Notes: generated by a model from the letters alone, not told the origin. DNA of 64,000 nucleotides from Anthoceros angustus (GCA_010909165.1 MU008158.1:2939478-3003477), one strand, 5' to 3'; counted from the stretch's first letter, positions 36,779 through 47,000 are shown. Numbers and translations are program-made.

Positions 36779-39606
36779 ATGGCGGGAGTCCAGTCAACTC
36801 GCTTGGCTCCGTGCCCCGTCTATCGGGTCCTCTACCTTCTCACGGCTCTGCCCATGTTGCTGGCCGCTTTTGCATTTGTGCTTCAGTGGAATGGAGAAGT
36901 GAACGATTCTGCTGGAACTGCACGGCTGGATGGCGAGACTCTTAGGTTTCCGGGCATGCAAATCACCTCTCCTTCCGCTGGGCATTTGTCCTCTGCCGAT
37001 GCTCTCAGTCGATTGCAGCCCAATTCTGCCACCTCGGTGCCGCACCAGCCTGGCTGGCAGGATTTGTCCTTAAACGATTTGGGTCCCAAGGTGAGATTTG
37101 CCCTGGAGGTGCCAGATAATTTGCAAAGGAACTGCTTGGCTAGTTACGGTTGACACCTTGCTGCTCCTGCTTGATCCAGATATGCATCGCGTCAAGCACA
37201 TCAGCTGGGCTGGATCAGATTCTGCCCTGGTTGTTCTTTCATCGTGTGCTGGGTGTCACCAGATTTTTCCTTTTCGTAGAGGGGAAGGCAGCTTCTCCGC
37301 ACAGTGCAGCTATCCTCGAGAGCATCACTGTGAGTACGACCTACCCATCTGTTCGGCATTTTTTTAAGGCTGTTATTCCGTTAATCCTAGTGTCTTTATG
37401 GTTGGTCGTAGGGTGTTACCGTGATTCACCGCACAAAGGACTTGGAGGAGCGGCAAGAGAAAAGGTTTTGCGGTCTCGTCTGGCCTTGGCTCTAAAGTTG
37501 ATTGCTGCTTCGCAGTTTATCTGTTCAACGTTTAAATTTACCTGCTATGCCACATGACTCTTTGCAGCGATGTACTTAAGCATGTGGCATCAGACAGCGT
37601 TTGTTGTTGGCAGCTTGTTAATATGTGGCTCACTGTTTGATATCAGTCGGATCTGGAATGAGACTTGGTTGTCAAGTTTCTTCTATCGGCCTTGTAACTA
37701 CGAGCTATTTGTGAAGCAGTCCCTTAACATGGAGATGGCGATAGTGATGGCCCGAGTAAGCATTTCATGATGATCTGTAGCAAACCATGTCAGGGGGCAA
37801 TGATTGCAGCAGATGGCATGCCATTTAGGCGGGCCCTTTCTTTGGTTAATCTGGCCATGTTGTGACTATAGTCATCTCCCATCAAAGAGATAGGCACATG
37901 GTTCAATTATGTCCCGATCTAAGGAACTGCTTTTCTGGAAACTGCAACTGTAGGATTCTGGCATGGAGTGGATTATTCATCTTGACACGGATGAATTACT
38001 GCACCCTGCGGGTGCCAGGGAGTATTCTCTTCGAAGTCTACTTGGTGATGTTGCGGCTGACGTGGACATGGTTGTTTTCCCAAATTATGTGAGTGATAAA
38101 TGCGGAGGTTGCAGCACTTTGAACATTGAGTCCCCAAGTGATCCCTTTCAATTATTCCTTGCTGCACCAATCAGCTACACTGCTCACCAGTAATTCGTTG
38201 GAGTACAGGAGAGTGCTATTGAACGGGATGATATTGTGGATCCCTTTACTGAGGTGAGTGTAACCTTCTTATGTAACCTTCTAGCTGAATTGGTGCCAAT
38301 ATGCAGGATACTGCATAGCAATTATAGCCTTCTAAACAGGTTGTCCTCTTGCTAGCATGCATGAGATGCTTCAGCTTTGTTGTTCAAGTCAGATATGTGT
38401 GTCATGAAGGTCATTTGTCCGAATCGTTGGAATCAGTCCATCATGGCGATGCTTAGCAGCTGCTTTATTCGATGTCATGAGAAAGGTTTGCGGAACATTG
38501 TTTAGAAGCCTGTGTAAAAACTGGTCTTTCTATCCGTTTGCTGAAGAACTCATTAATTATGCAGGTCTCCATGTTCAAAAAGAACTTTGATCACGTGCCA
38601 AAGGAAACGTATTTTGGCTTGTACAAAGAGGCCACCCGAGGCAATCCAAATTATTTTTTGACCTATGGAAATGGCAAGGCGGCAGCACGAGTTCAGGATC
38701 ATCTTCGCCCAAATGGTGCCCATCGCTGGCACAACTACATGAAGAACCCGAAGTCAGTTATGTCTGTTTAATTTTGATTGAAGATGCTGTGGCAGTCTGG
38801 TTCACCTGAGCTGACGGGAATAGATGATTACTGGCCATGCAGCGAGGTTAAATTGGAGGAAGCAGCAGTTCTTCATTATACATACTCAAAGTTTTCAGAC
38901 TTAACATCCAGGCGTGATCGATGTAACTGCAAGCCTACAAAGGAGGATGTGAAGAGATGCTTCATGCTGGAGTTCGATCGAGCTGTATGGTTTCTCTTTT
39001 TCATATGCCTATCCTTGTGTAGTGTGTAAAAGTTGCTTTTCTTCTGCTAATTCTATGTCCATTGTACAGGCCTTTATAATTGCTTCGACCTCAACTGAGG
39101 AGGGGATGCACCGCTGGTATTTAACCCCCCCCTGGCCCCCCTCCCGAACAATCATGACTTCGTCTTTGCTTGCTTCTTAAGAATCAAAAAGTAATTACAC
39201 TGTATTTGCTTTTTTCAGGTATCGGGAGCATGTCGTTTGGACTGACAAAGAGCTGAACTTGAAGTTAACAAGGAAGGGCCTCCTTACTCGCATCTATGCC
39301 CCTCAGGTCTGTCTTTGTCTGGCAGGAATGCTGCCTTTACAGATGCCAGTCACCAAGTGAAGTTGTATGAGGAGAACTGCAATTATCTAGAGTGGGGATG
39401 TGAGTAATCATTTACTTTTCTTTTGCTCGCAGGTTATTGTACAAGGTCTTAGGGATGCAGGCGTTTTCAAGGATGCTCTGGCGTCCGGGGAGGCGCATTT
39501 TCGAAACTCCGCCCTCAAGAACGAGCTGCGATCCTCCGGCGTCGCTTCACCCAAAGGCGTTGGTCCCTCCCAAGCAGACGGTCAATCCAACGTAGCAGTG
39601 GAGTAG
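36779..39606 (+). CDS. KOB1: Glycosyltransferase-like KOBITO1/ELD1/ABI8 homologue, multi-exon
   Basis: [82 protein letters not shown]...[13 protein letters not shown] and [25 protein letters not shown]. Confidence 0.92.
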
Positions 39607-40293
39607 AGCAATTTAGGTGGCACATTTTTAACTGGGATGTTTACTGAATGACTCTGTACCTCTTTCAATTCTTCGCTAACACATTTGTGGGTGGACCTGT
39701 GGGACTGGGAGCTCGAGTTTGTTTTTGTATCCACCATTGCTAGTAATAATCACTGAAATCAGAAAATTCTTAGCAGAATATAATGCTCATCCGTGACCTA
39801 GTCGGTTTAAATGCTGTTTATCGCACACTGATTTGTTCGTGGGATTGCGCATCTCAACTCGCCTATAACCCGGTTGTGGTGTGCCGCTTTGTTTCGGCCC
39901 AACTGGTCTTCAAATCGCGATGTTCAGATACCCATGGTTCAGGTTTTATAATAATTCATGATGATTCATGAAAACTCGGGAGTAACTTACAACGAGTTGA
40001 AACTCCGAGTAAAAAATCTACACACTCCTGAATGCATACACCATACACACTCGGAGTGTAGGAAACTCGCCGATCGGTGGTACGAGCTGTTTGCTGGCTA
40101 GGAGTTGTCCTGTTACCTGTAAACAAGGTAAAAGAAGGTTCACCTGATCGTGACTGCAGAAATGAGACAGATTCGGGGAAAACAGTAGAAACGAAGGGAC
40201 AGAATGGCTAGCAAGGCATCCGTATACTGACCCTGCAAAGATGCAAGTACTTCGGGATTTGAAGAACCAAAACATCCCTGAGGTACCGTCTTC

Positions 40294-42015
40294 CTAAGTA
40301 ACATCTACTTCGGAGCTCCGATTGCTGTTTTCAGTTACCTTCTCTGAACTCGCCTTGTATGTCAAAAACACTGTCCAGAAGAATGCAGCAGAGTTGCTAA
40401 ACAACGGCTGCCAGGACACGCCACAACCGAACCCCTCCACCACCCACCACACCGCAACCAAACAACACCGAAAGAAAAACCATAAGCCAATGTAAGTCCA
40501 GGTCCTCGGTCTCGAGACAACAGCAAACGCAAGAGACAACACAATCCACCTTGCCATCATGAATCAGATGTGCAAGCTGAACATAAGAATATCACAAACA
40601 ACAAACTCACTGCAAAACACATCAGGGCAATAGTGGACGAGCCCTGGCCACATTGCATATTGCAAATAAACAGAAACAGGTTCTCCCCCCTGCTAACGCC
40701 ACCAATCTATCCACCAGTGGGCCTGAGCGTCAGTCAAGCAACATGCTCAGCCATTGTCAAAATCTTGACCAGTGACCGACTTCGGAGTTCATGTGGAACA
40801 GGTCCGAAAATTCGAGTCCCCACGGGTTCCCCCTGCTTGTTTACAATGACTACTGCATTATTGTCAAATCTTATCTCACTTCCGTCATTACGCTGTTTCT
40901 GCATGGATGTACGCACTATCACACAATTCACAACCTCTCCCTTTTTGACTTTCCCGCGAGGAGTTGCGTCTTTTACAGACGCAATGATGGAATCACCTAA
41001 TGTGGCACCACTTCCTCCTCCCAAAACTTTAATACATTGAACGCGTCGAGCTCCAGAATTGTCAGCCACTTCAAGGTTGGTTCTCAGTTGCACGAAAGCT
41101 CTCCGTTGCTACCAGTAACGTATTTGTCCAGAGGACAATATCAACATAGCAGTTTCCAGTATCATATTCAAATTACTAGATGCTCCATAGGACATGCAAG
41201 GCAGCACCCATCGATTCTACGAGTGAAGATAAAATACCTGGAGATGCAGCGGCACGTATCGGTAAATCAGGAAATCGCACACAGGCCAGTACACAAGCCC
41301 GTGCTTGAGAGTGGGAATCACGTCCCGACGCAGTCTTCCAGCAATCTCCCTCGTTGTCTCTCCTGGAAACAATCGGGTGGTGGTGTTCACCCAAACACCA
41401 AGCACGAAAAGGCAGGATAGAAGAATTGCAATCCCTACCTTGAGCGAGGGCATTTGCAGAGAAGAAGACGGCAATGAAGCTGGGCCCATAAACAGTTTGC
41501 CCCAGTACAATCTTCTTGAAAACAGAGAACATGTCACGCTTCGGTATCATCTTGGCTAGGAAATTGAACCATACGTGAAGGCTTGGGCCTGACACGAAAA
41601 ACCCAAATGCCGCCATTCGCAGGGTTCTGGGCATGTCCCAAATAGGGGATTCCGCATCATGAGTCTCGTGAGACGCACATATTCCCTGGAGCGAGAACAG
41701 ACTGAATCAGGTTACAAAACACAAGCTTGCTCCAGCTCGGTCGATGCAAAGCCAACGTCAAACAGAGCAGACCTGACATGCGAGGTCCGCGGAAGCGTAA
41801 ATGGTGCAGGCCGTCACACTCTTGGTTCCAATGGGATGGTTTTGAAGCATCCGAAGGTACCACCCCAGCAAGGGGGAGGTGGAAGGTGCCGGTCGCAAGG
41901 GCTGCGCGACCACAGCCTTGTCATCTGGTGAAAGCTGAGGCCTCGCTCGACGAGACGTGCAGAGCAGGCGTGCAGGGAAGTTCGCAGCGTGCGGTAGGCG
42001 CCAGGATCGTAGCAT
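40294..42015 (-). CDS. Mpv17/PMP22-family membrane protein with a predicted mitochondrial presequence; exons 42015-41773, 41685-41439, 41362-41238, 40407-40294
   Basis: [24 protein letters not shown]; [29 protein letters not shown]; [31 protein letters not shown]|[20 protein letters not shown]. All introns are GT-AG and phase-consistent. An upstream in-frame ATG also exists at 42159. Confidence 0.9.
40734..41108 (-). CDS. rpl14: Mitochondrial-type ribosomal protein uL14 (HUELLENLOS-like) exon nested in Mpv17 intron 3; no own start codon
   Basis: [31 protein letters not shown]...[12 protein letters not shown]...[13 protein letters not shown]...[10 protein letters not shown]. The codon immediately upstream is an in-frame TAG whose AG can act as the splice acceptor. 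Confidence 0.92.
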
Positions 42016-42220
42016 GCTGATTGCCGGGCGGGCAGGCACGCAGCCGTCAGCTAAGAACCTAGCAGGCCTCACTCCTGGGCCCGGGAGCAGACGGGAAACA
42101 TACTTAGGTCGACCTAGGCACGTAAATCGGCAAAAATTAATTGTCTGGAGATATTCCATTTCAAAAATTGTGTAGGTAGAAAGTACAAACAGGATGGAGG
42201 GAGGCTAGCCGAGCAGCTTT

Positions 42221-44030
<1,810 letters not shown>

Positions 44031-47000
44031 ACCGGTTGACGAGGGGCGAATCACCGGTCCGGCAATGCAGAGAATGGCGCCTCTGGGAGAAGGAAGAAAG
44101 GGAGGAAATCTGCGGCTCGCAAGGCCAGGCCAGCTGGCGACATTTCAGTGGCTTACTGACATCTTATCGGAGAGGGTCTACGGCCGCGGATTCCTGGCCA
44201 CGCATCGCTAATCTTTGGCATCGCCTCACAAAACTTACAAGCAGGAGGCTGAAAACTGCGATGGGCTATTTCAGGAATGTGGTGTACAATTTCCTGATGT
44301 CACAAGACTAGGCGACAAAACCGCTGTTCGTTGGGAAAATTATTTTGTAGTCCCTCTCCTACTACCGCAAGCTTCTCTCCAACTCCAACTGCGACCGGAT
44401 CATGTGGATGAGTTGCTTATACCCCCGTCCGCGAGGCTGAAACAATACAAATTCGATTACCCAACAGCTTTCATGGATGCTGTACAATTTAAGGTACATT
44501 TTTCTGCACCACGAATTCTGAGATACCCCGTTTATGTGCGGGATGTAATGTAGAGAGTCTGTGCGACCAAAGAATTTTTAGAACATAAACTATGAAGTAT
44601 TTTTATTTCGTAAAATATTTGGTAAATGTTTTCTAGAATTGCGTAACAACATGGTGACCGTATCGTGTTCAAAGTTTTAAAGTCAAGTTTCGGGGACTAT
44701 GTTCATAAGATGTGAAGGGGTATTATTCCGTTTATTTTTATAATTGAACATCTAATTTTTAAAATCCACAAAGTTTTTGGGATGGAAGCACTTGGGGAAC
44801 TCAAAGTCGGATCACCTTCTTCAAAGTTGCTTGACCTTTTGCATTGGCCGGTACGGCTTGGTGTAGTCGGCGGTTGCAGCCCAAATCGGAGCGTGGGCAG
44901 AAGGGAGCGCACCAGCACAAAAGGGGCAGGAGGACCCCATTCTCGGGGCTATTGAAGTCGCGCCTTGAGGCACTACATTCTTTTAGATCAATTTTGAGCA
45001 ATCTTGGCTCTTTCCTAATGCAATCTTGCGGATTCTTGTTCGGCAACACCGGGACTGCTAAAGTCTCGAATACTCACCTTGCTAGGACTGATTGAGTCCC
45101 AGCTATTCTTGTAGCCGGAACTGCCGGAGTCTCGAATGTGGACATGCAGGCTGCTGGGAGTGTTAGAACCCCGAGTATCGGGACTCTCGGAGTCCCGAGT
45201 ATGCTTTGACGTAGGACTTGTAGAGTCCTTGGCCTGCATTGCTTAGGGCTCACCAACACTCTCCAAACCTGTCCACATGCCTTCTAACCAGGCTGTCTGT
45301 GGTACACGATTGGCTGCAAAAGATGTCAGCGGTTTAGCTAAAAATGGAGCCACTTGACCAATAAGAGGGCGAGTAGCACGCCGATGCTGCCCATTGAAAT
45401 CGGGCCTCCAAATCCAGATTGAGGAGGCTGCTGGCCTAGAAATCGTGCCACATCCTGCGCCCCACATCCTACCCGGGACTCATCCACACCCAGCGCTTCG
45501 AGGCAATTAGGACTTTTGGCCGTCCCAATCTTCTTTTCATCTCGCACGACATGGGCTCGTAGCTGTCCAGCAGGCACATACTGCAAGTAAGACTTGATCG
45601 AGATCAGGACTCGTGCGTTCTCGGGCCATCCCGATCTCGATCACGCCTACTCGGTCTCCCAAACCCTGCTAGCCCGCTCCTTACCTTTTCCTTGTTTTTG
45701 GCATCTTACACATTTGGCCTTTTAAGTATAGTAATTTCTTGATTTTTAATTTTACTAATTCTAATTAATCTACGCCGAATCACCCCTCGGGGTACGGTAC
45801 TCCCACTCACTATGAAATAAAATGAGGGAGATATTTACTCTATTCTTATGGCTCAAAATAAATCCATAAAGCTAGCTTTTAGCTAAATTGAATTCAAGCA
45901 AAGACTTAAGTAAAACCATTTAAGATTTACGTCCAATTTAAAATAAGTATGAACCATTAAGCGTTCTTATGAACCACTTTTCTCTTGAAACCAAAAACCG
46001 GGTTTTCTTCCTGAGAGGATAAGGTAGAACCCGAACATTGTTGAAGGTGAGTAATTGGAAACCTGAGTTGGTTATTGTTGCTGGAAGAGTTTTTTAATTA
46101 GGCTTTGCAAAATTATTCTGATACCATGAAGAGAATCAAAGACTTGCTCAAGAAGTTGATGCATTAAGCTCATAATAGATAGTACATGTTTATAGGAGGT
46201 AGGTGAGTACAGGTAGTTGTAACCAAATAATTAATTATCTAATTAGTAAAATATTTTTATTCCTAATAATTAATTAATTCAATTTTAGGATTTTCTAGGT
46301 GCCCCTAATGAATAATGCCTTAATTATCTTAATATTTCATCATGGTTCAACAAACGGGATGCTTGATTATTGAAATTGTTAGGCTGGAGCAACATGAGGG
46401 AGGTGTAGTTCCCTTCGACCCAACAAATAAGAATTCTTGAGATAGTTTGAAATATATTTTTTTACCGATGGGTTATAGTTGTAAAGAGTACCATCCTTTC
46501 CCTTATCACGGTATCATATTGCTTGTTCCTTCTACTTGTGATCCTCACCTATAAATGCTAATGTGTTGCTTTTGCAGTCTCCGTTGGTGCTTACATCTGC
46601 TATGTTTGCTTGCTTTTCTTATTTGTGATTATCACCATCATTATCATTATCAACGGGAAAAATCTGGCGCTTTAGACCTCGCACGAAAAACACGCTAAGA
46701 TAAGCACACACCTCCAAAAACCTCAAAAGCCTCCGGAACCTCCATGAGGTTCCTCGAGGTATTTGTAGCAAGTAAGTGGTTAAAAGTCTAATACCATTAA
46801 TGGAAGCATCTAAGAAGAAAGACTCCTAAAAACGTAGGCATAAGTAATTGAAATCAAGTTTTTTCTTTGTGGGTATATGTGAGTTATGGCTTTGGCATTT
46901 GCGGCATGACGTATTTTTATGGAGGTAAATGGGATCGCGATCATGGAGTTGAAGGGGTTTTCTCATAGGTCTCTCTAGTTTTCTTGCCATAAGTTTAGAG

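What the first reader, a model, noticed from the sequence alone, without database searches (positions are those of the whole stretch)
40294..42015. Mitochondrial rpl14 hidden in the last intron of an Mpv17/PMP22 gene: probably two unrelated proteins from one gene
Seen in sequence: the Mpv17 exon-3 donor (CAG|GT at 41238, phase 0) splices correctly to the conserved last exon at 40407 ([11 protein letters not shown]). The 830-nt intron between them contains a complete, intact 124-aa uL14 coding exon (41108-40734) on the same strand. This exon has no ATG before the conserved domain and is preceded directly by an in-frame TAG. That TAG's AG is a phase-0 acceptor, compatible with both the Mpv17 exon-1 donor (41773) and the exon-3 donor (41238). 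Mpv17 exon 1 starts with an Arg/Ser/Leu-rich presequence ([23 protein letters not shown]), and the uL14 exon starts with QRRAF-VQ, an R-3-type processing site. Established: rpl14 is absent from land-plant mitochondrial genomes and is nuclear-encoded (Arabidopsis HUELLENLOS). In grasses, rps14 sits in an sdh2 intron and shares its presequence by alternative splicing. Inference: this is an analogous but different arrangement, in which uL14m and Mpv17 are mutually exclusive 3' exons sharing promoter and targeting peptide, possibly via an MPP-cleaved precursor. I know of no description of this pairing.
Basis: partly seen in the sequence, partly recalled or inferred. Interest (0 to 1): 0.92.

Follow-up and report, generated by a model that had tools for sequence, protein, structure and literature searches.

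The report
Mitoribosomal uL14 spliced onto Mpv17 gene

Summary
On the minus strand a four-exon Mpv17/SYM1-like gene (42015-40294) carries an intact 124-codon uL14 segment (41108-40734) in its 830-nt last intron. That segment has no ATG and is directly preceded by an in-frame TAG.

Transcript contigs from four related organisms show two canonical GT-AG joints from the exon-3 donor at 41238. One goes to 40407 and gives Mpv17 (242 aa). The other goes to 41108 and gives an open 329-aa frame: Mpv17 residues 1-205 plus uL14. The two joints have similar depth. The uL14 segment is not a separate cassette: its transcript runs on through the distal acceptor, so this is alternative 3' splice-site choice.

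The nearest relatives found (92% and 88% identical) encode free-standing 144-aa precursors with their own 24-residue presequence. Marchantia and Sphagnum genes are also not nested. An angiosperm SYM1 orthologue has the same last intron, empty. So the capture looks derived and lineage-specific.

Import and cleavage at the conserved QRRAF|VQ motif are inferred, not shown. This is a new variant of the rps14/sdh2 and rpl32/SODcp kind, unusual because the shared part is most of a polytopic membrane protein. I found no paper describing it.

The parts
42016..42084 (-). 5' UTR of the shared transcript. Contigs end at 42067 (X1) and 42084 (X13). There is no ATG upstream of 42015 within it.
41773..42015 (-). 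Mpv17/SYM1-like exon 1 (81 codons, phase-0 donor). Residues 1-47 are an Arg-rich extension with no acidic residue before D31, a putative mitochondrial presequence. The conserved family core starts at LLGWYL.
41439..41685 (-). Mpv17 exon 2 (247 nt), 64-69% identical to angiosperm 'protein SYM1' / 'PXMP2/4 family protein 4'.
41238..41362 (-). Mpv17 exon 3 (125 nt), matching PF04117 positions 7-46. Its phase-0 donor at 41238 is the branch point of the two mRNAs.
41109..41237 (-). 129-nt intron removed in the uL14 mRNA (GT..AG). It ends in TAG, which is both the acceptor and an in-frame stop, and aligns with a CAG (Gln) codon of the free-standing relative.
40734..41108 (-). uL14m coding segment (124 codons plus TGA), used as the proximal alternative 3' terminal exon. 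No indel here in organisms B-D.
41088..41108 (-). QRRAFVQ, the streptophyte-wide R-x-F motif at the front of uL14m and the candidate MPP/ICP55 (-3R type) processing site.
40408..40733 (-). Non-coding in both forms: 3' UTR of the uL14 mRNA and intron of the Mpv17 mRNA. Diverges by about 10% among organisms A-D and carries the only indel (40584).
40294..40407 (-). Mpv17 exon 4 (37 codons plus stop), matching PF04117 positions 48-61 and encoding the last hydrophobic helix. Uses the distal acceptor. Read through as 3' UTR in the uL14 mRNA.
40089..40293 (-). Shared 3' UTR. The X1 contig ends at 40089. The poly(A) site was not mapped.

Best explanation
One transcription unit makes two mRNAs by choosing between two 3' splice sites after exon 3 of an Mpv17/SYM1-like gene. 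The distal acceptor (40407) gives the complete 242-aa membrane protein. The proximal acceptor (41108) gives a 329-aa chimeric precursor: Mpv17 residues 1-205 (putative presequence plus most of the membrane domain, lacking the last helix) fused in frame to mitochondrial ribosomal protein uL14m. The stop is at 40734 and Mpv17 exon 4 becomes 3' UTR. Shown here: the gene anatomy, both joints in RNA of four related organisms at comparable depth, the open frame, strong purifying selection on uL14, and the absence of this nesting in the nearest relatives found and in the outgroups examined. Inferred: the precursor is imported using the Mpv17 N-terminus and is cut on the matrix side at the conserved R-x-F motif (QRRAF|VQ) by MPP, with or without ICP55. 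That would release a uL14m whose N-terminus corresponds to residue 2 of bacterial uL14. Historically, an older free-standing nuclear uL14m gene landed in a pre-existing Mpv17 intron and lost its own start and presequence.
For: One search shows the joints. 41238 to 40407 has depth 43.7/191.7/809.6/9.7 and 41238 to 41108 has depth 50.4/377.4/414.5/10.9 in X1/X2/X6/X13. Both have GT..AG ends. Contigs cover 40381-41110 continuously, and in X6 one contig carries the uL14 segment and about 29 further letters that match the side length of the 41108-41238 joint, so it probably crosses into exon 3. Exons 1-3 contigs are shared. B-D have no indel in the uL14 CDS and only an in-frame 6-nt change in exon 2. 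One search shows the open 329-aa frame. Searches give the Pfam matches. Searches place the segment with plant mitochondrial uL14m (Arabidopsis mitoribosome HLP, 6XYW, E 3e-43) and alphaproteobacteria. One search gives dN 0.05 against pS 0.85. Searches show that relative L003 has an intronless 144-aa ORF with its own ATG and no Mpv17 exon within 1.7 kb upstream or 2.4 kb downstream. Searches show Marchantia and Sphagnum are not nested. One search shows the Nelumbo SYM1 orthologue has the same intron after ..VHLQ, without uL14. Searches show the R-x-F-[IV]-Q motif is kept from Closterium to angiosperms despite unrelated upstream sequences. PMC4986872 gives the plant -3R motif RX(F/Y/I/L)|(S/A). 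PMC1543663 describes the SDH2-RPS14 precursor as thought to be proteolytically processed between its two parts.
Against: No protein data exist: import, cleavage and the mature N-terminus are untested. The residue after the putative cut is V, not the usual S/A. The carried part contains several hydrophobic helices, which is awkward for delivering a matrix protein. Published Mpv17/Sym1 topologies disagree (4 TM N-out/C-out in PMC6166979; 5 TM with the C-terminus in the matrix in bioRxiv 2024.04.12.589178), so the side on which uL14 would emerge is uncertain. Contigs hide rare isoforms. Bin-depth arithmetic hints at some retention of the 129-nt intron in X1. I could not scan the whole genome for a second uL14m copy. 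The organism is inferred, not known. The host protein's mitochondrial location is inferred from its sequence only.
Confidence: 0.65

Rival explanations
1. uL14 is made independently of the Mpv17 reading frame. Possible routes are a minor exon-1-to-uL14 mRNA (41773 to 41108, the reader's other option, giving a 205-aa precursor), a transcript that starts in or retains the 129-nt intron, or non-AUG initiation at GTG 41093.
For: Both donors are phase 0. Depth arithmetic leaves unexplained coverage over 41119-41237 in X1, roughly 25-45 against 50 for the spliced joint. GTG 41093 sits where the bacterial start codon would be. Some mitoribosomal proteins are imported without a cleavable presequence (my own knowledge).
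Against: No 41773-41108 joint appears in any of four runs. X6 and X13 depths leave no room for intron coverage. With the intron retained, the Mpv17 frame stops after 6 codons and the uL14 frame is closed by TAG. No AUG precedes the domain. A downstream non-AUG ORF is a poor substrate for eukaryotic translation.
Confidence: 0.12
2. The chimeric mRNA is a tolerated splicing by-product. Functional uL14m comes from another locus, and this copy is redundant or on its way out.
For: I could not search the rest of the genome. The fusion to a membrane protein looks awkward. The long 3' UTR (about 650 nt) could make the mRNA unstable.
Against: The proximal joint is as abundant as the Mpv17 joint in four organisms. 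The ORF is intact, in frame, and free of indels in all four, while the flanking 40408-40733 diverges by about 10% and carries an indel. dN is 0.05 with saturated synonymous sites. Notes on about 1,000 windows of this genome mention no other uL14, which is weak evidence. No exon junction lies downstream of the stop, so it is not a classical NMD target.
Confidence: 0.1
3. The 329-aa protein is not cleaved. uL14m stays anchored in the inner membrane through the truncated Mpv17 domain and tethers the large mitoribosomal subunit, or an assembly intermediate, to the membrane.
For: The frame is open across the junction. The shared part keeps the hydrophobic helices at about residues 66-85, 103-128, 136-164 and 178-196. 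Mitoribosomes are membrane-associated in other eukaryotes (my own knowledge).
Against: The R-x-F motif is retained exactly at the junction, as in every free-standing streptophyte uL14m, which fits processing. Close relatives work with a 24-residue presequence and no anchor. uL14 lies at the subunit-interface side rather than at the exit tunnel (my own knowledge).
Confidence: 0.08

Closest known systems
rps14 nested in the sdh2 (SDHB) intron of grasses (Figueroa 1999; Kubo 1999; reviewed in PMC1543663)
   Same: A mitochondrial ribosomal protein coding segment without its own start lies in an intron of a nuclear gene for another mitochondrial protein, on the same strand. Alternative splicing gives the host mRNA or a chimeric host-exon plus r-protein mRNA. 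The host N-terminus is thought to supply targeting, and the fusion precursor to be processed between the two parts.
   Different: Here the host is a polytopic Mpv17/SYM1-type membrane protein and 205 residues (three exons, most of the protein) are shared. SDH2 is a soluble iron-sulphur subunit contributing one exon. The event is alternative 3' splice-site use with a shared 3' end. rpl14 left the mtDNA before land plants (PMC3814193) and sister lineages have a free-standing nuclear gene, so this is a secondary capture and not the original activation of a fresh transfer. Processing is untested here.
SODcp-RPL32 chimeric gene of Malpighiales and mangrove (Cusack & Wolfe 2007; Ueda 2007; PMC8429499)
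   Same: An organelle ribosomal protein is expressed from a host gene by alternative splicing and borrows its targeting peptide.
   Different: That case concerns the plastid, not the mitochondrion. Its host is a soluble enzyme. It followed a recent plastid-to-nucleus transfer, and in poplar it resolved by duplication and subfunctionalisation.
Plant mitochondrial uL14m (Arabidopsis HUELLENLOS/HLP; mitoribosome structure 6XYW chain Ak)
   Same: The uL14 segment is an orthologue: E 3e-43, with QRRAF aligned to QRRTF at residues 43-47 of HLP. The R-x-F-[IV]-Q motif is the same.
   Different: HLP and all other streptophyte uL14m proteins examined carry their own, lineage-specific N-terminal extension (24-200 aa) in a dedicated gene. 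None of the 20 long-extension hits scanned with Pfam has an Mpv17 domain, nor does any of the 283 proteins retrieved by blastp, except the Mpv17 homologues themselves.
Mpv17/PMP22 family: yeast Sym1, human MPV17, plant 'protein SYM1'
   Same: The host gene is a full member. PF04117 is split over exons 3 and 4. It is 52-54% identical to angiosperm SYM1 over the core, with the same four-exon layout as Nelumbo.
   Different: No family member is known to me, or was found in the literature searches, that has an alternative C-terminus encoding a ribosomal protein.

Membership tests
Ribosomal protein uL14 (Pfam PF00238) | Full-length match to the L14p/L23e profile above the gathering score | tested here: met
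   153.6 bits against a cut-off of 23.6, profile positions 2-121 of 122
Mitochondrial-type uL14m of streptophytes (HLL/HLP orthologues) | Groups with plant mitochondrial uL14m and alphaproteobacterial L14 rather than plastid uL14c, and keeps the R-x-F-[IV]-Q front motif | tested here: met
   Best solved match is the Arabidopsis mitoribosome HLP (E 3e-43); spinach plastid L14 scores only 1e-28. Nearest database proteins are moss, liverwort and lycophyte uL14m and Alphaproteobacteria. Tree. Motif.
Mitochondrial-type uL14m of streptophytes (HLL/HLP orthologues) | Actually incorporated into the mitoribosome | not testable with these tools
   Needs proteomics of purified mitoribosomes
Mpv17/PMP22 family (Pfam PF04117) | Match to the family profile and conserved core | tested here: met
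   Exon 3 matches positions 7-46 (38.3 bits, cut-off 27) and exon 4 matches positions 48-61. Alignment with SYM1 orthologues. Same exon layout as Nelumbo.
Mpv17/PMP22 family (Pfam PF04117) | Location in the mitochondrial inner membrane (as opposed to the peroxisomal or plastid paralogues) | tested here: inconclusive
   Only sequence features are available: a 47-residue Arg-rich N-terminal extension beginning MLRSWRL. No predictor or experiment was available.
Host-gene-nested organellar r-protein gene expressed by alternative splicing (rps14/sdh2 type) | r-protein CDS inside a host intron, same strand, without its own start codon | tested here: met
Host-gene-nested organellar r-protein gene expressed by alternative splicing (rps14/sdh2 type) | Two mature mRNAs that share the host 5' exons, one host-only and one chimeric and in frame | tested here: met
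   Joints 41238-40407 and 41238-41108 in four runs. Open 329-aa frame.
Host-gene-nested organellar r-protein gene expressed by alternative splicing (rps14/sdh2 type) | Chimeric precursor is imported and cut between the host part and the r-protein | not testable with these tools
   Only the conserved R-x-F motif at the junction speaks for it
Host-gene-nested organellar r-protein gene expressed by alternative splicing (rps14/sdh2 type) | Arrangement arose as the activation step of a recent organelle-to-nucleus transfer | tested here: not met
   rpl14 is missing from the mtDNA of bryophytes, Zygnematales and Coleochaetales (PMC3814193). The sister lineage has a free-standing nuclear gene with its own presequence. 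This looks like a secondary capture.

The most novel reading that the evidence does not exclude
The 329-aa product is a working, uncleaved protein: a truncated Mpv17 membrane domain that carries uL14m at its matrix end and so anchors the large mitoribosomal subunit, or its assembly, to the inner membrane. A milder version is that the precursor is first inserted into the membrane and then clipped at the membrane face by the bc1-integrated plant MPP. That would leave a truncated Mpv17 with its own role and couple the dosage of a channel protein to mitoribosome production.
Probability: 0.08. Interest if true: 0.85.

Novelty: new variant of a known kind. Interest (0 to 1): 0.62.

Why it matters
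Known cases of organellar ribosomal protein genes riding on a host gene (rps14/sdh2, rpl32/SODcp) are few. They all involve soluble hosts and recent transfers. This case has three consequences if it holds.

- The same solution would be open to a gene that had lived in the nucleus since before land plants, replacing a working presequence.
- The borrowed part could be most of a polytopic membrane protein.
- That raises a concrete, testable question about mitochondrial import and processing: how is a matrix protein released from behind several hydrophobic helices?

It would also tie expression of a mitoribosomal protein to an Mpv17/SYM1 homologue, a family linked to mtDNA maintenance in humans. 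Finally, it warns annotators that this uL14m will be missed or mis-modelled; no product of it was found in the protein collections searched (though a 329-aa fusion lay outside one search's length range).

Tried and rejected
1. Exon-1-to-uL14 splicing (41773 to 41108). No such joint appears in four runs. It is kept only as a minor rival.

2. A remnant of the relatives' presequence in the 129-nt intron (ILETAM against LLELAM). Local alignment scored no better than 1158 of 2000 shuffles, so rejected. Only the TAG/CAG correspondence at the acceptor is retained as an observation.

3. A conserved exon boundary in front of the Q-R-R-x-F motif across land plants. Not so: the Marchantia CDS is intronless, and the Sphagnum intron lies 8 codons further upstream.

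4. Mpv17-uL14 fusions elsewhere.
   - 20 long-extension hits were scanned with Pfam and none has PF04117. The other apparent fusions look like gene-model artefacts (retrotransposon, Skp1, DAP epimerase, S17).
   - The 329-aa fusion itself could not be used as a query, because a spliced product has no single reference and I did not type it. The length window of the search for homologous proteins (68-217 aa for the uL14 query) would have excluded it anyway.

5. Mature N-terminus of Arabidopsis uL14m in the N-terminomics supplements of PMC4986872: no entry.

6. Synteny between L003 and the window: none beyond the uL14 CDS.

7. Literature: no relevant paper for rpl14+Mpv17, HUELLENLOS+splicing, or hornwort/Anthoceros+Mpv17/PMP22/uL14m.

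8. Structure prediction of the fusion: not run, for the same reference problem.

Full report
**What is in the sequence**

On the minus strand, downstream of a highly expressed GAPDH-type gene (stop at 42221), lies a four-exon gene.
- Exon 1: 42015-41773, 243 nt.
- Exon 2: 41685-41439, 247 nt.
- Exon 3: 41362-41238, 125 nt.
- Exon 4: 40407-40294, 114 nt including the stop.

The joined product is 242 aa. Exon 3 matches Pfam PF04117 (Mpv17_PMP22) positions 7-46 (E 1.4e-9). Exon 4 matches positions 48-61, so the 41238/40407 junction continues the profile without a break. Exon 2 is 64-69% identical to angiosperm proteins named 'protein SYM1' or 'PXMP2/4 family protein 4'. The whole core aligns with them. 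The Nelumbo orthologue has the same four-exon layout, with its last intron after ..VHLQ. The window's protein has a 47-residue Arg-rich N-terminal extension (MLRSWRL...) in front of the conserved core.

**The nested segment**

The 830-nt last intron contains 41108-40734, which encodes 124 codons plus TGA.
- It matches PF00238 (Ribosomal_L14) over positions 2-121 of 122 (E 2.8e-45).
- It has no ATG in front of the domain.
- It is directly preceded by an in-frame TAG, whose AG is a phase-0 acceptor.
- Exons 1-3 total 615 nt, so splicing 41238 to 41108 gives an open 329-aa frame.
- The best solved relative is Arabidopsis mitoribosomal HLP (6XYW chain Ak, E 3e-43); plastid L14 scores far lower.
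- The nearest named database proteins are uL14m of Sphagnum (81%), Ceratodon (80%), Marchantia (76%) and Diphasiastrum (75%), then Alphaproteobacteria (64-66%).

**RNA evidence**

Logan contigs of four runs labelled as four different organisms were laid on 39400-45100. X1 is identical to the window. X2, X6 and X13 differ by about 3-4% over 40381-41110. The contigs lack the introns of GAPDH and of Mpv17, so they are transcripts.

From the donor at 41238 there are two joints, both with GT..AG ends.

| Joint | X1 | X2 | X6 | X13 |
|---|---|---|---|---|
| 41238 to 40407 (skips 830) | 43.7 | 191.7 | 809.6 | 9.7 |
| 41238 to 41108 (skips 129) | 50.4 | 377.4 | 414.5 | 10.9 |

- The exon 1-3 contig is common to both forms.
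- No joint from 41773 to 41108 is listed in any run.
- In every run a contig covers the uL14 segment continuously, in three of them down to 40381. That is across the distal acceptor and about 27 nt into Mpv17 exon 4, where the two paths merge.
- In X6 that contig has about 29 further letters beyond 41108. This equals the listed side length of the 41108-41238 joint, so they probably lie on exon 3.

The event is therefore a choice between a proximal and a distal 3' splice site. In the uL14 mRNA, Mpv17 exon 4 is 3' UTR, and no exon junction lies downstream of the stop.

**Signs of constraint inside the clade**

- The only indel in the 40381-41110 contigs is at 40584, which is non-coding in both forms.
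- At least 13 of the 26 substitutions of X2 fall in 40462-40588. This leaves at most 13 for the remaining 522 nt, which include the 375-nt CDS.
- Organisms B-D carry a 6-nt, in-frame difference at the start of exon 2.

One loose end remains. Bin-depth arithmetic leaves unexplained coverage over the 129-nt intron in X1 (roughly 25-45). There is none in X6 or X13.

**Relatives**

The closest proteins in the 90% clusters are P0162 (92% identical, Logan contig L003 of 4607 nt) and P0161 (88%, a Trinity transcript).
- Both come from free-standing 144-aa ORFs with their own ATG and a 24-residue extension, MLARRQAVRLLELAMSQRSQ or MLGRRQVAGLLELAVQHRLQ, directly followed by Q-R/K-R-x-F-V-Q.
- In L003 the ORF is intronless. 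No Mpv17 exon lies within 1.7 kb upstream or 2.4 kb downstream.
- DNA identity to the window is 76% over the CDS and stops exactly at 41110 and 40738.
- The window's TAG aligns with a CAG (Gln) codon of L003.
- Nei-Gojobori counting gives dN 0.05 and pS 0.85, which is saturated. This indicates long and strong purifying selection.
- In a maximum-likelihood tree the window is sister to (P0161, P0162) with support 98/93. The clade is separate from mosses, liverworts, a lycophyte, a fern, seed plants and Zygnematophyceae.
- The Marchantia uL14m CDS is intronless and lies between a prefoldin gene and a DUF2462 gene. The Sphagnum gene has one intron 8 codons upstream of the motif. Neither is near an Mpv17 gene.
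- None of the 20 long-extension uL14 hits scanned with Pfam carries an Mpv17 domain.

By parsimony, a free-standing nuclear gene is ancestral. The nested, start-less state is derived in the window's lineage, and the host intron is older than the insertion.

**Organism**

The organism is not given.
- The uL14 clade lies outside all named lineages.
- Introns are very short and intergenic spacers about 110 nt.
- Unchecked notes of this scan mention nuclear rps1, rps19 and sdh3 and hornwort-type editing factors.

Together these make a hornwort likely. I treat that as an inference.

**How it most likely works**

Shown here: one promoter, two mRNAs, and two reading frames that share 205 codons.

Inferred: the chimeric precursor uses the Mpv17 N-terminus for mitochondrial import and is cut just in front of the uL14 domain. 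The argument for cutting is the motif.
- Every streptophyte uL14m examined, from Closterium to angiosperms, has R-x-F-[IV]-Q exactly where bacterial L14 has Met-Ile-Gln, whatever precedes it.
- The window keeps the motif as QRRAF-VQ at the first codons of the segment.
- R-x-(F/Y/I/L)|(S/A) is the plant -3R class, read as MPP cleavage at -2R followed by removal of one residue by ICP55 (PMC4986872). The residue after the cut here is V, so the fit is partial.
- The SDH2-RPS14 precursor of grasses is described as thought to be proteolytically processed between its two parts (PMC1543663).

Whether uL14 would emerge on the matrix side depends on Mpv17 topology, which is unsettled.
- In the four-helix N-out/C-out model, human residues 162-170 fall in the last helix (PMC6166979). 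On that model exon 4 encodes that helix, and uL14 would replace it at the matrix end of the preceding loop.
- A five-helix model puts the C-terminus in the matrix (bioRxiv 2024.04.12.589178).
- My hydropathy scan finds hydrophobic stretches at about residues 66-85, 103-128, 136-164, 178-196 and 202-220.

**Comparison with what is known**

The arrangement works like rps14 in the sdh2 intron of grasses (PMC1543663) and like SODcp-RPL32 (PMC8429499). It differs in five ways.
- The host is a polytopic membrane protein.
- Three exons and 205 residues are shared.
- The mechanism is alternative acceptor use with a shared 3' end.
- The plant lineage is different.
- The history is different: rpl14 is missing from the mtDNA of bryophytes, Zygnematales and Coleochaetales (PMC3814193), so the gene had long been nuclear, and its sister lineage still has its own presequence.

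Full-text searches found no description of an Mpv17-rpl14 pairing.

**Verdict**

The finding is real, expressed and conserved in at least four close relatives. It is a new variant of a known kind. The RNA-level claim is strong, about 0.9. The protein-level mechanism of import and cleavage is plausible but untested, giving an overall confidence of 0.65. Interest is 0.62. It would be higher if the fusion proves to be uncleaved, or if import of a matrix protein behind several membrane helices is demonstrated.

Noticed in passing
window 42221-44170 (minus strand): GAPDH-type gene (C-terminus ..[24 protein letters not shown]) with at least five introns seen as joints. Its depth is 20-50 times that of the Mpv17 gene. 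Its transcript 3' end (loose ends at 42193 and 42219) lies only about 110-130 nt from the 5' end of the Mpv17 transcript contigs (42067-42084). The Mpv17/uL14 promoter must therefore sit in or right after the GAPDH 3' UTR.
   Followed up: partly
window 41659-41684: Organisms B-D replace 26 window letters at the start of Mpv17 exon 2 with 20 letters. This is an in-frame 6-nt difference, two codons shorter, in the loop after the first helix.
   Followed up: partly
window 41109-41237: Bin depths in run X1 exceed what the listed contigs explain by roughly 25-45 over the 129-nt intron. This suggests partial retention of that intron in X1 only. X6 and X13 leave no room for it. The contig itself was not among the rows shown.
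   Followed up: partly
window 39918-40230: Run X13 shows two further joints (39918-40044 and 40114-40230) downstream of the Mpv17 stop. They could be introns in the 3' UTR or belong to the next gene. Another expressed gene covers 39430-39816.
   Followed up: no
L003 1701-2135, and P0161: The closest relatives encode uL14m as an intronless 144-aa ORF with a very short (24-residue) presequence, MLxRRQ..LLELA... P0161 is labelled as the second ORF (p2) of its Trinity transcript, so another ORF shares that transcript.
   Followed up: partly
P0001-P0226 (streptophyte uL14m set): All streptophyte uL14m proteins examined replace the bacterial initiator Met with Phe and have Arg two residues before it (Q-Q-x-R-x-F-[IV]-Q). 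Upstream extensions are unrelated between lineages and range from 24 to about 200 residues.
   Followed up: partly
other windows of this genome (notes s1-300106, s1-291225, s1-305995, s1-300286): Unchecked first-reader notes report other chimeric or relocated mitochondrial genes in the same genome: an ATPbeta-SDH3 chimera, ubiquitin fused to a uL6 half, and nuclear rps1 and rps19. If they are real, this genome may be rich in second-hand targeting solutions.
   Followed up: no
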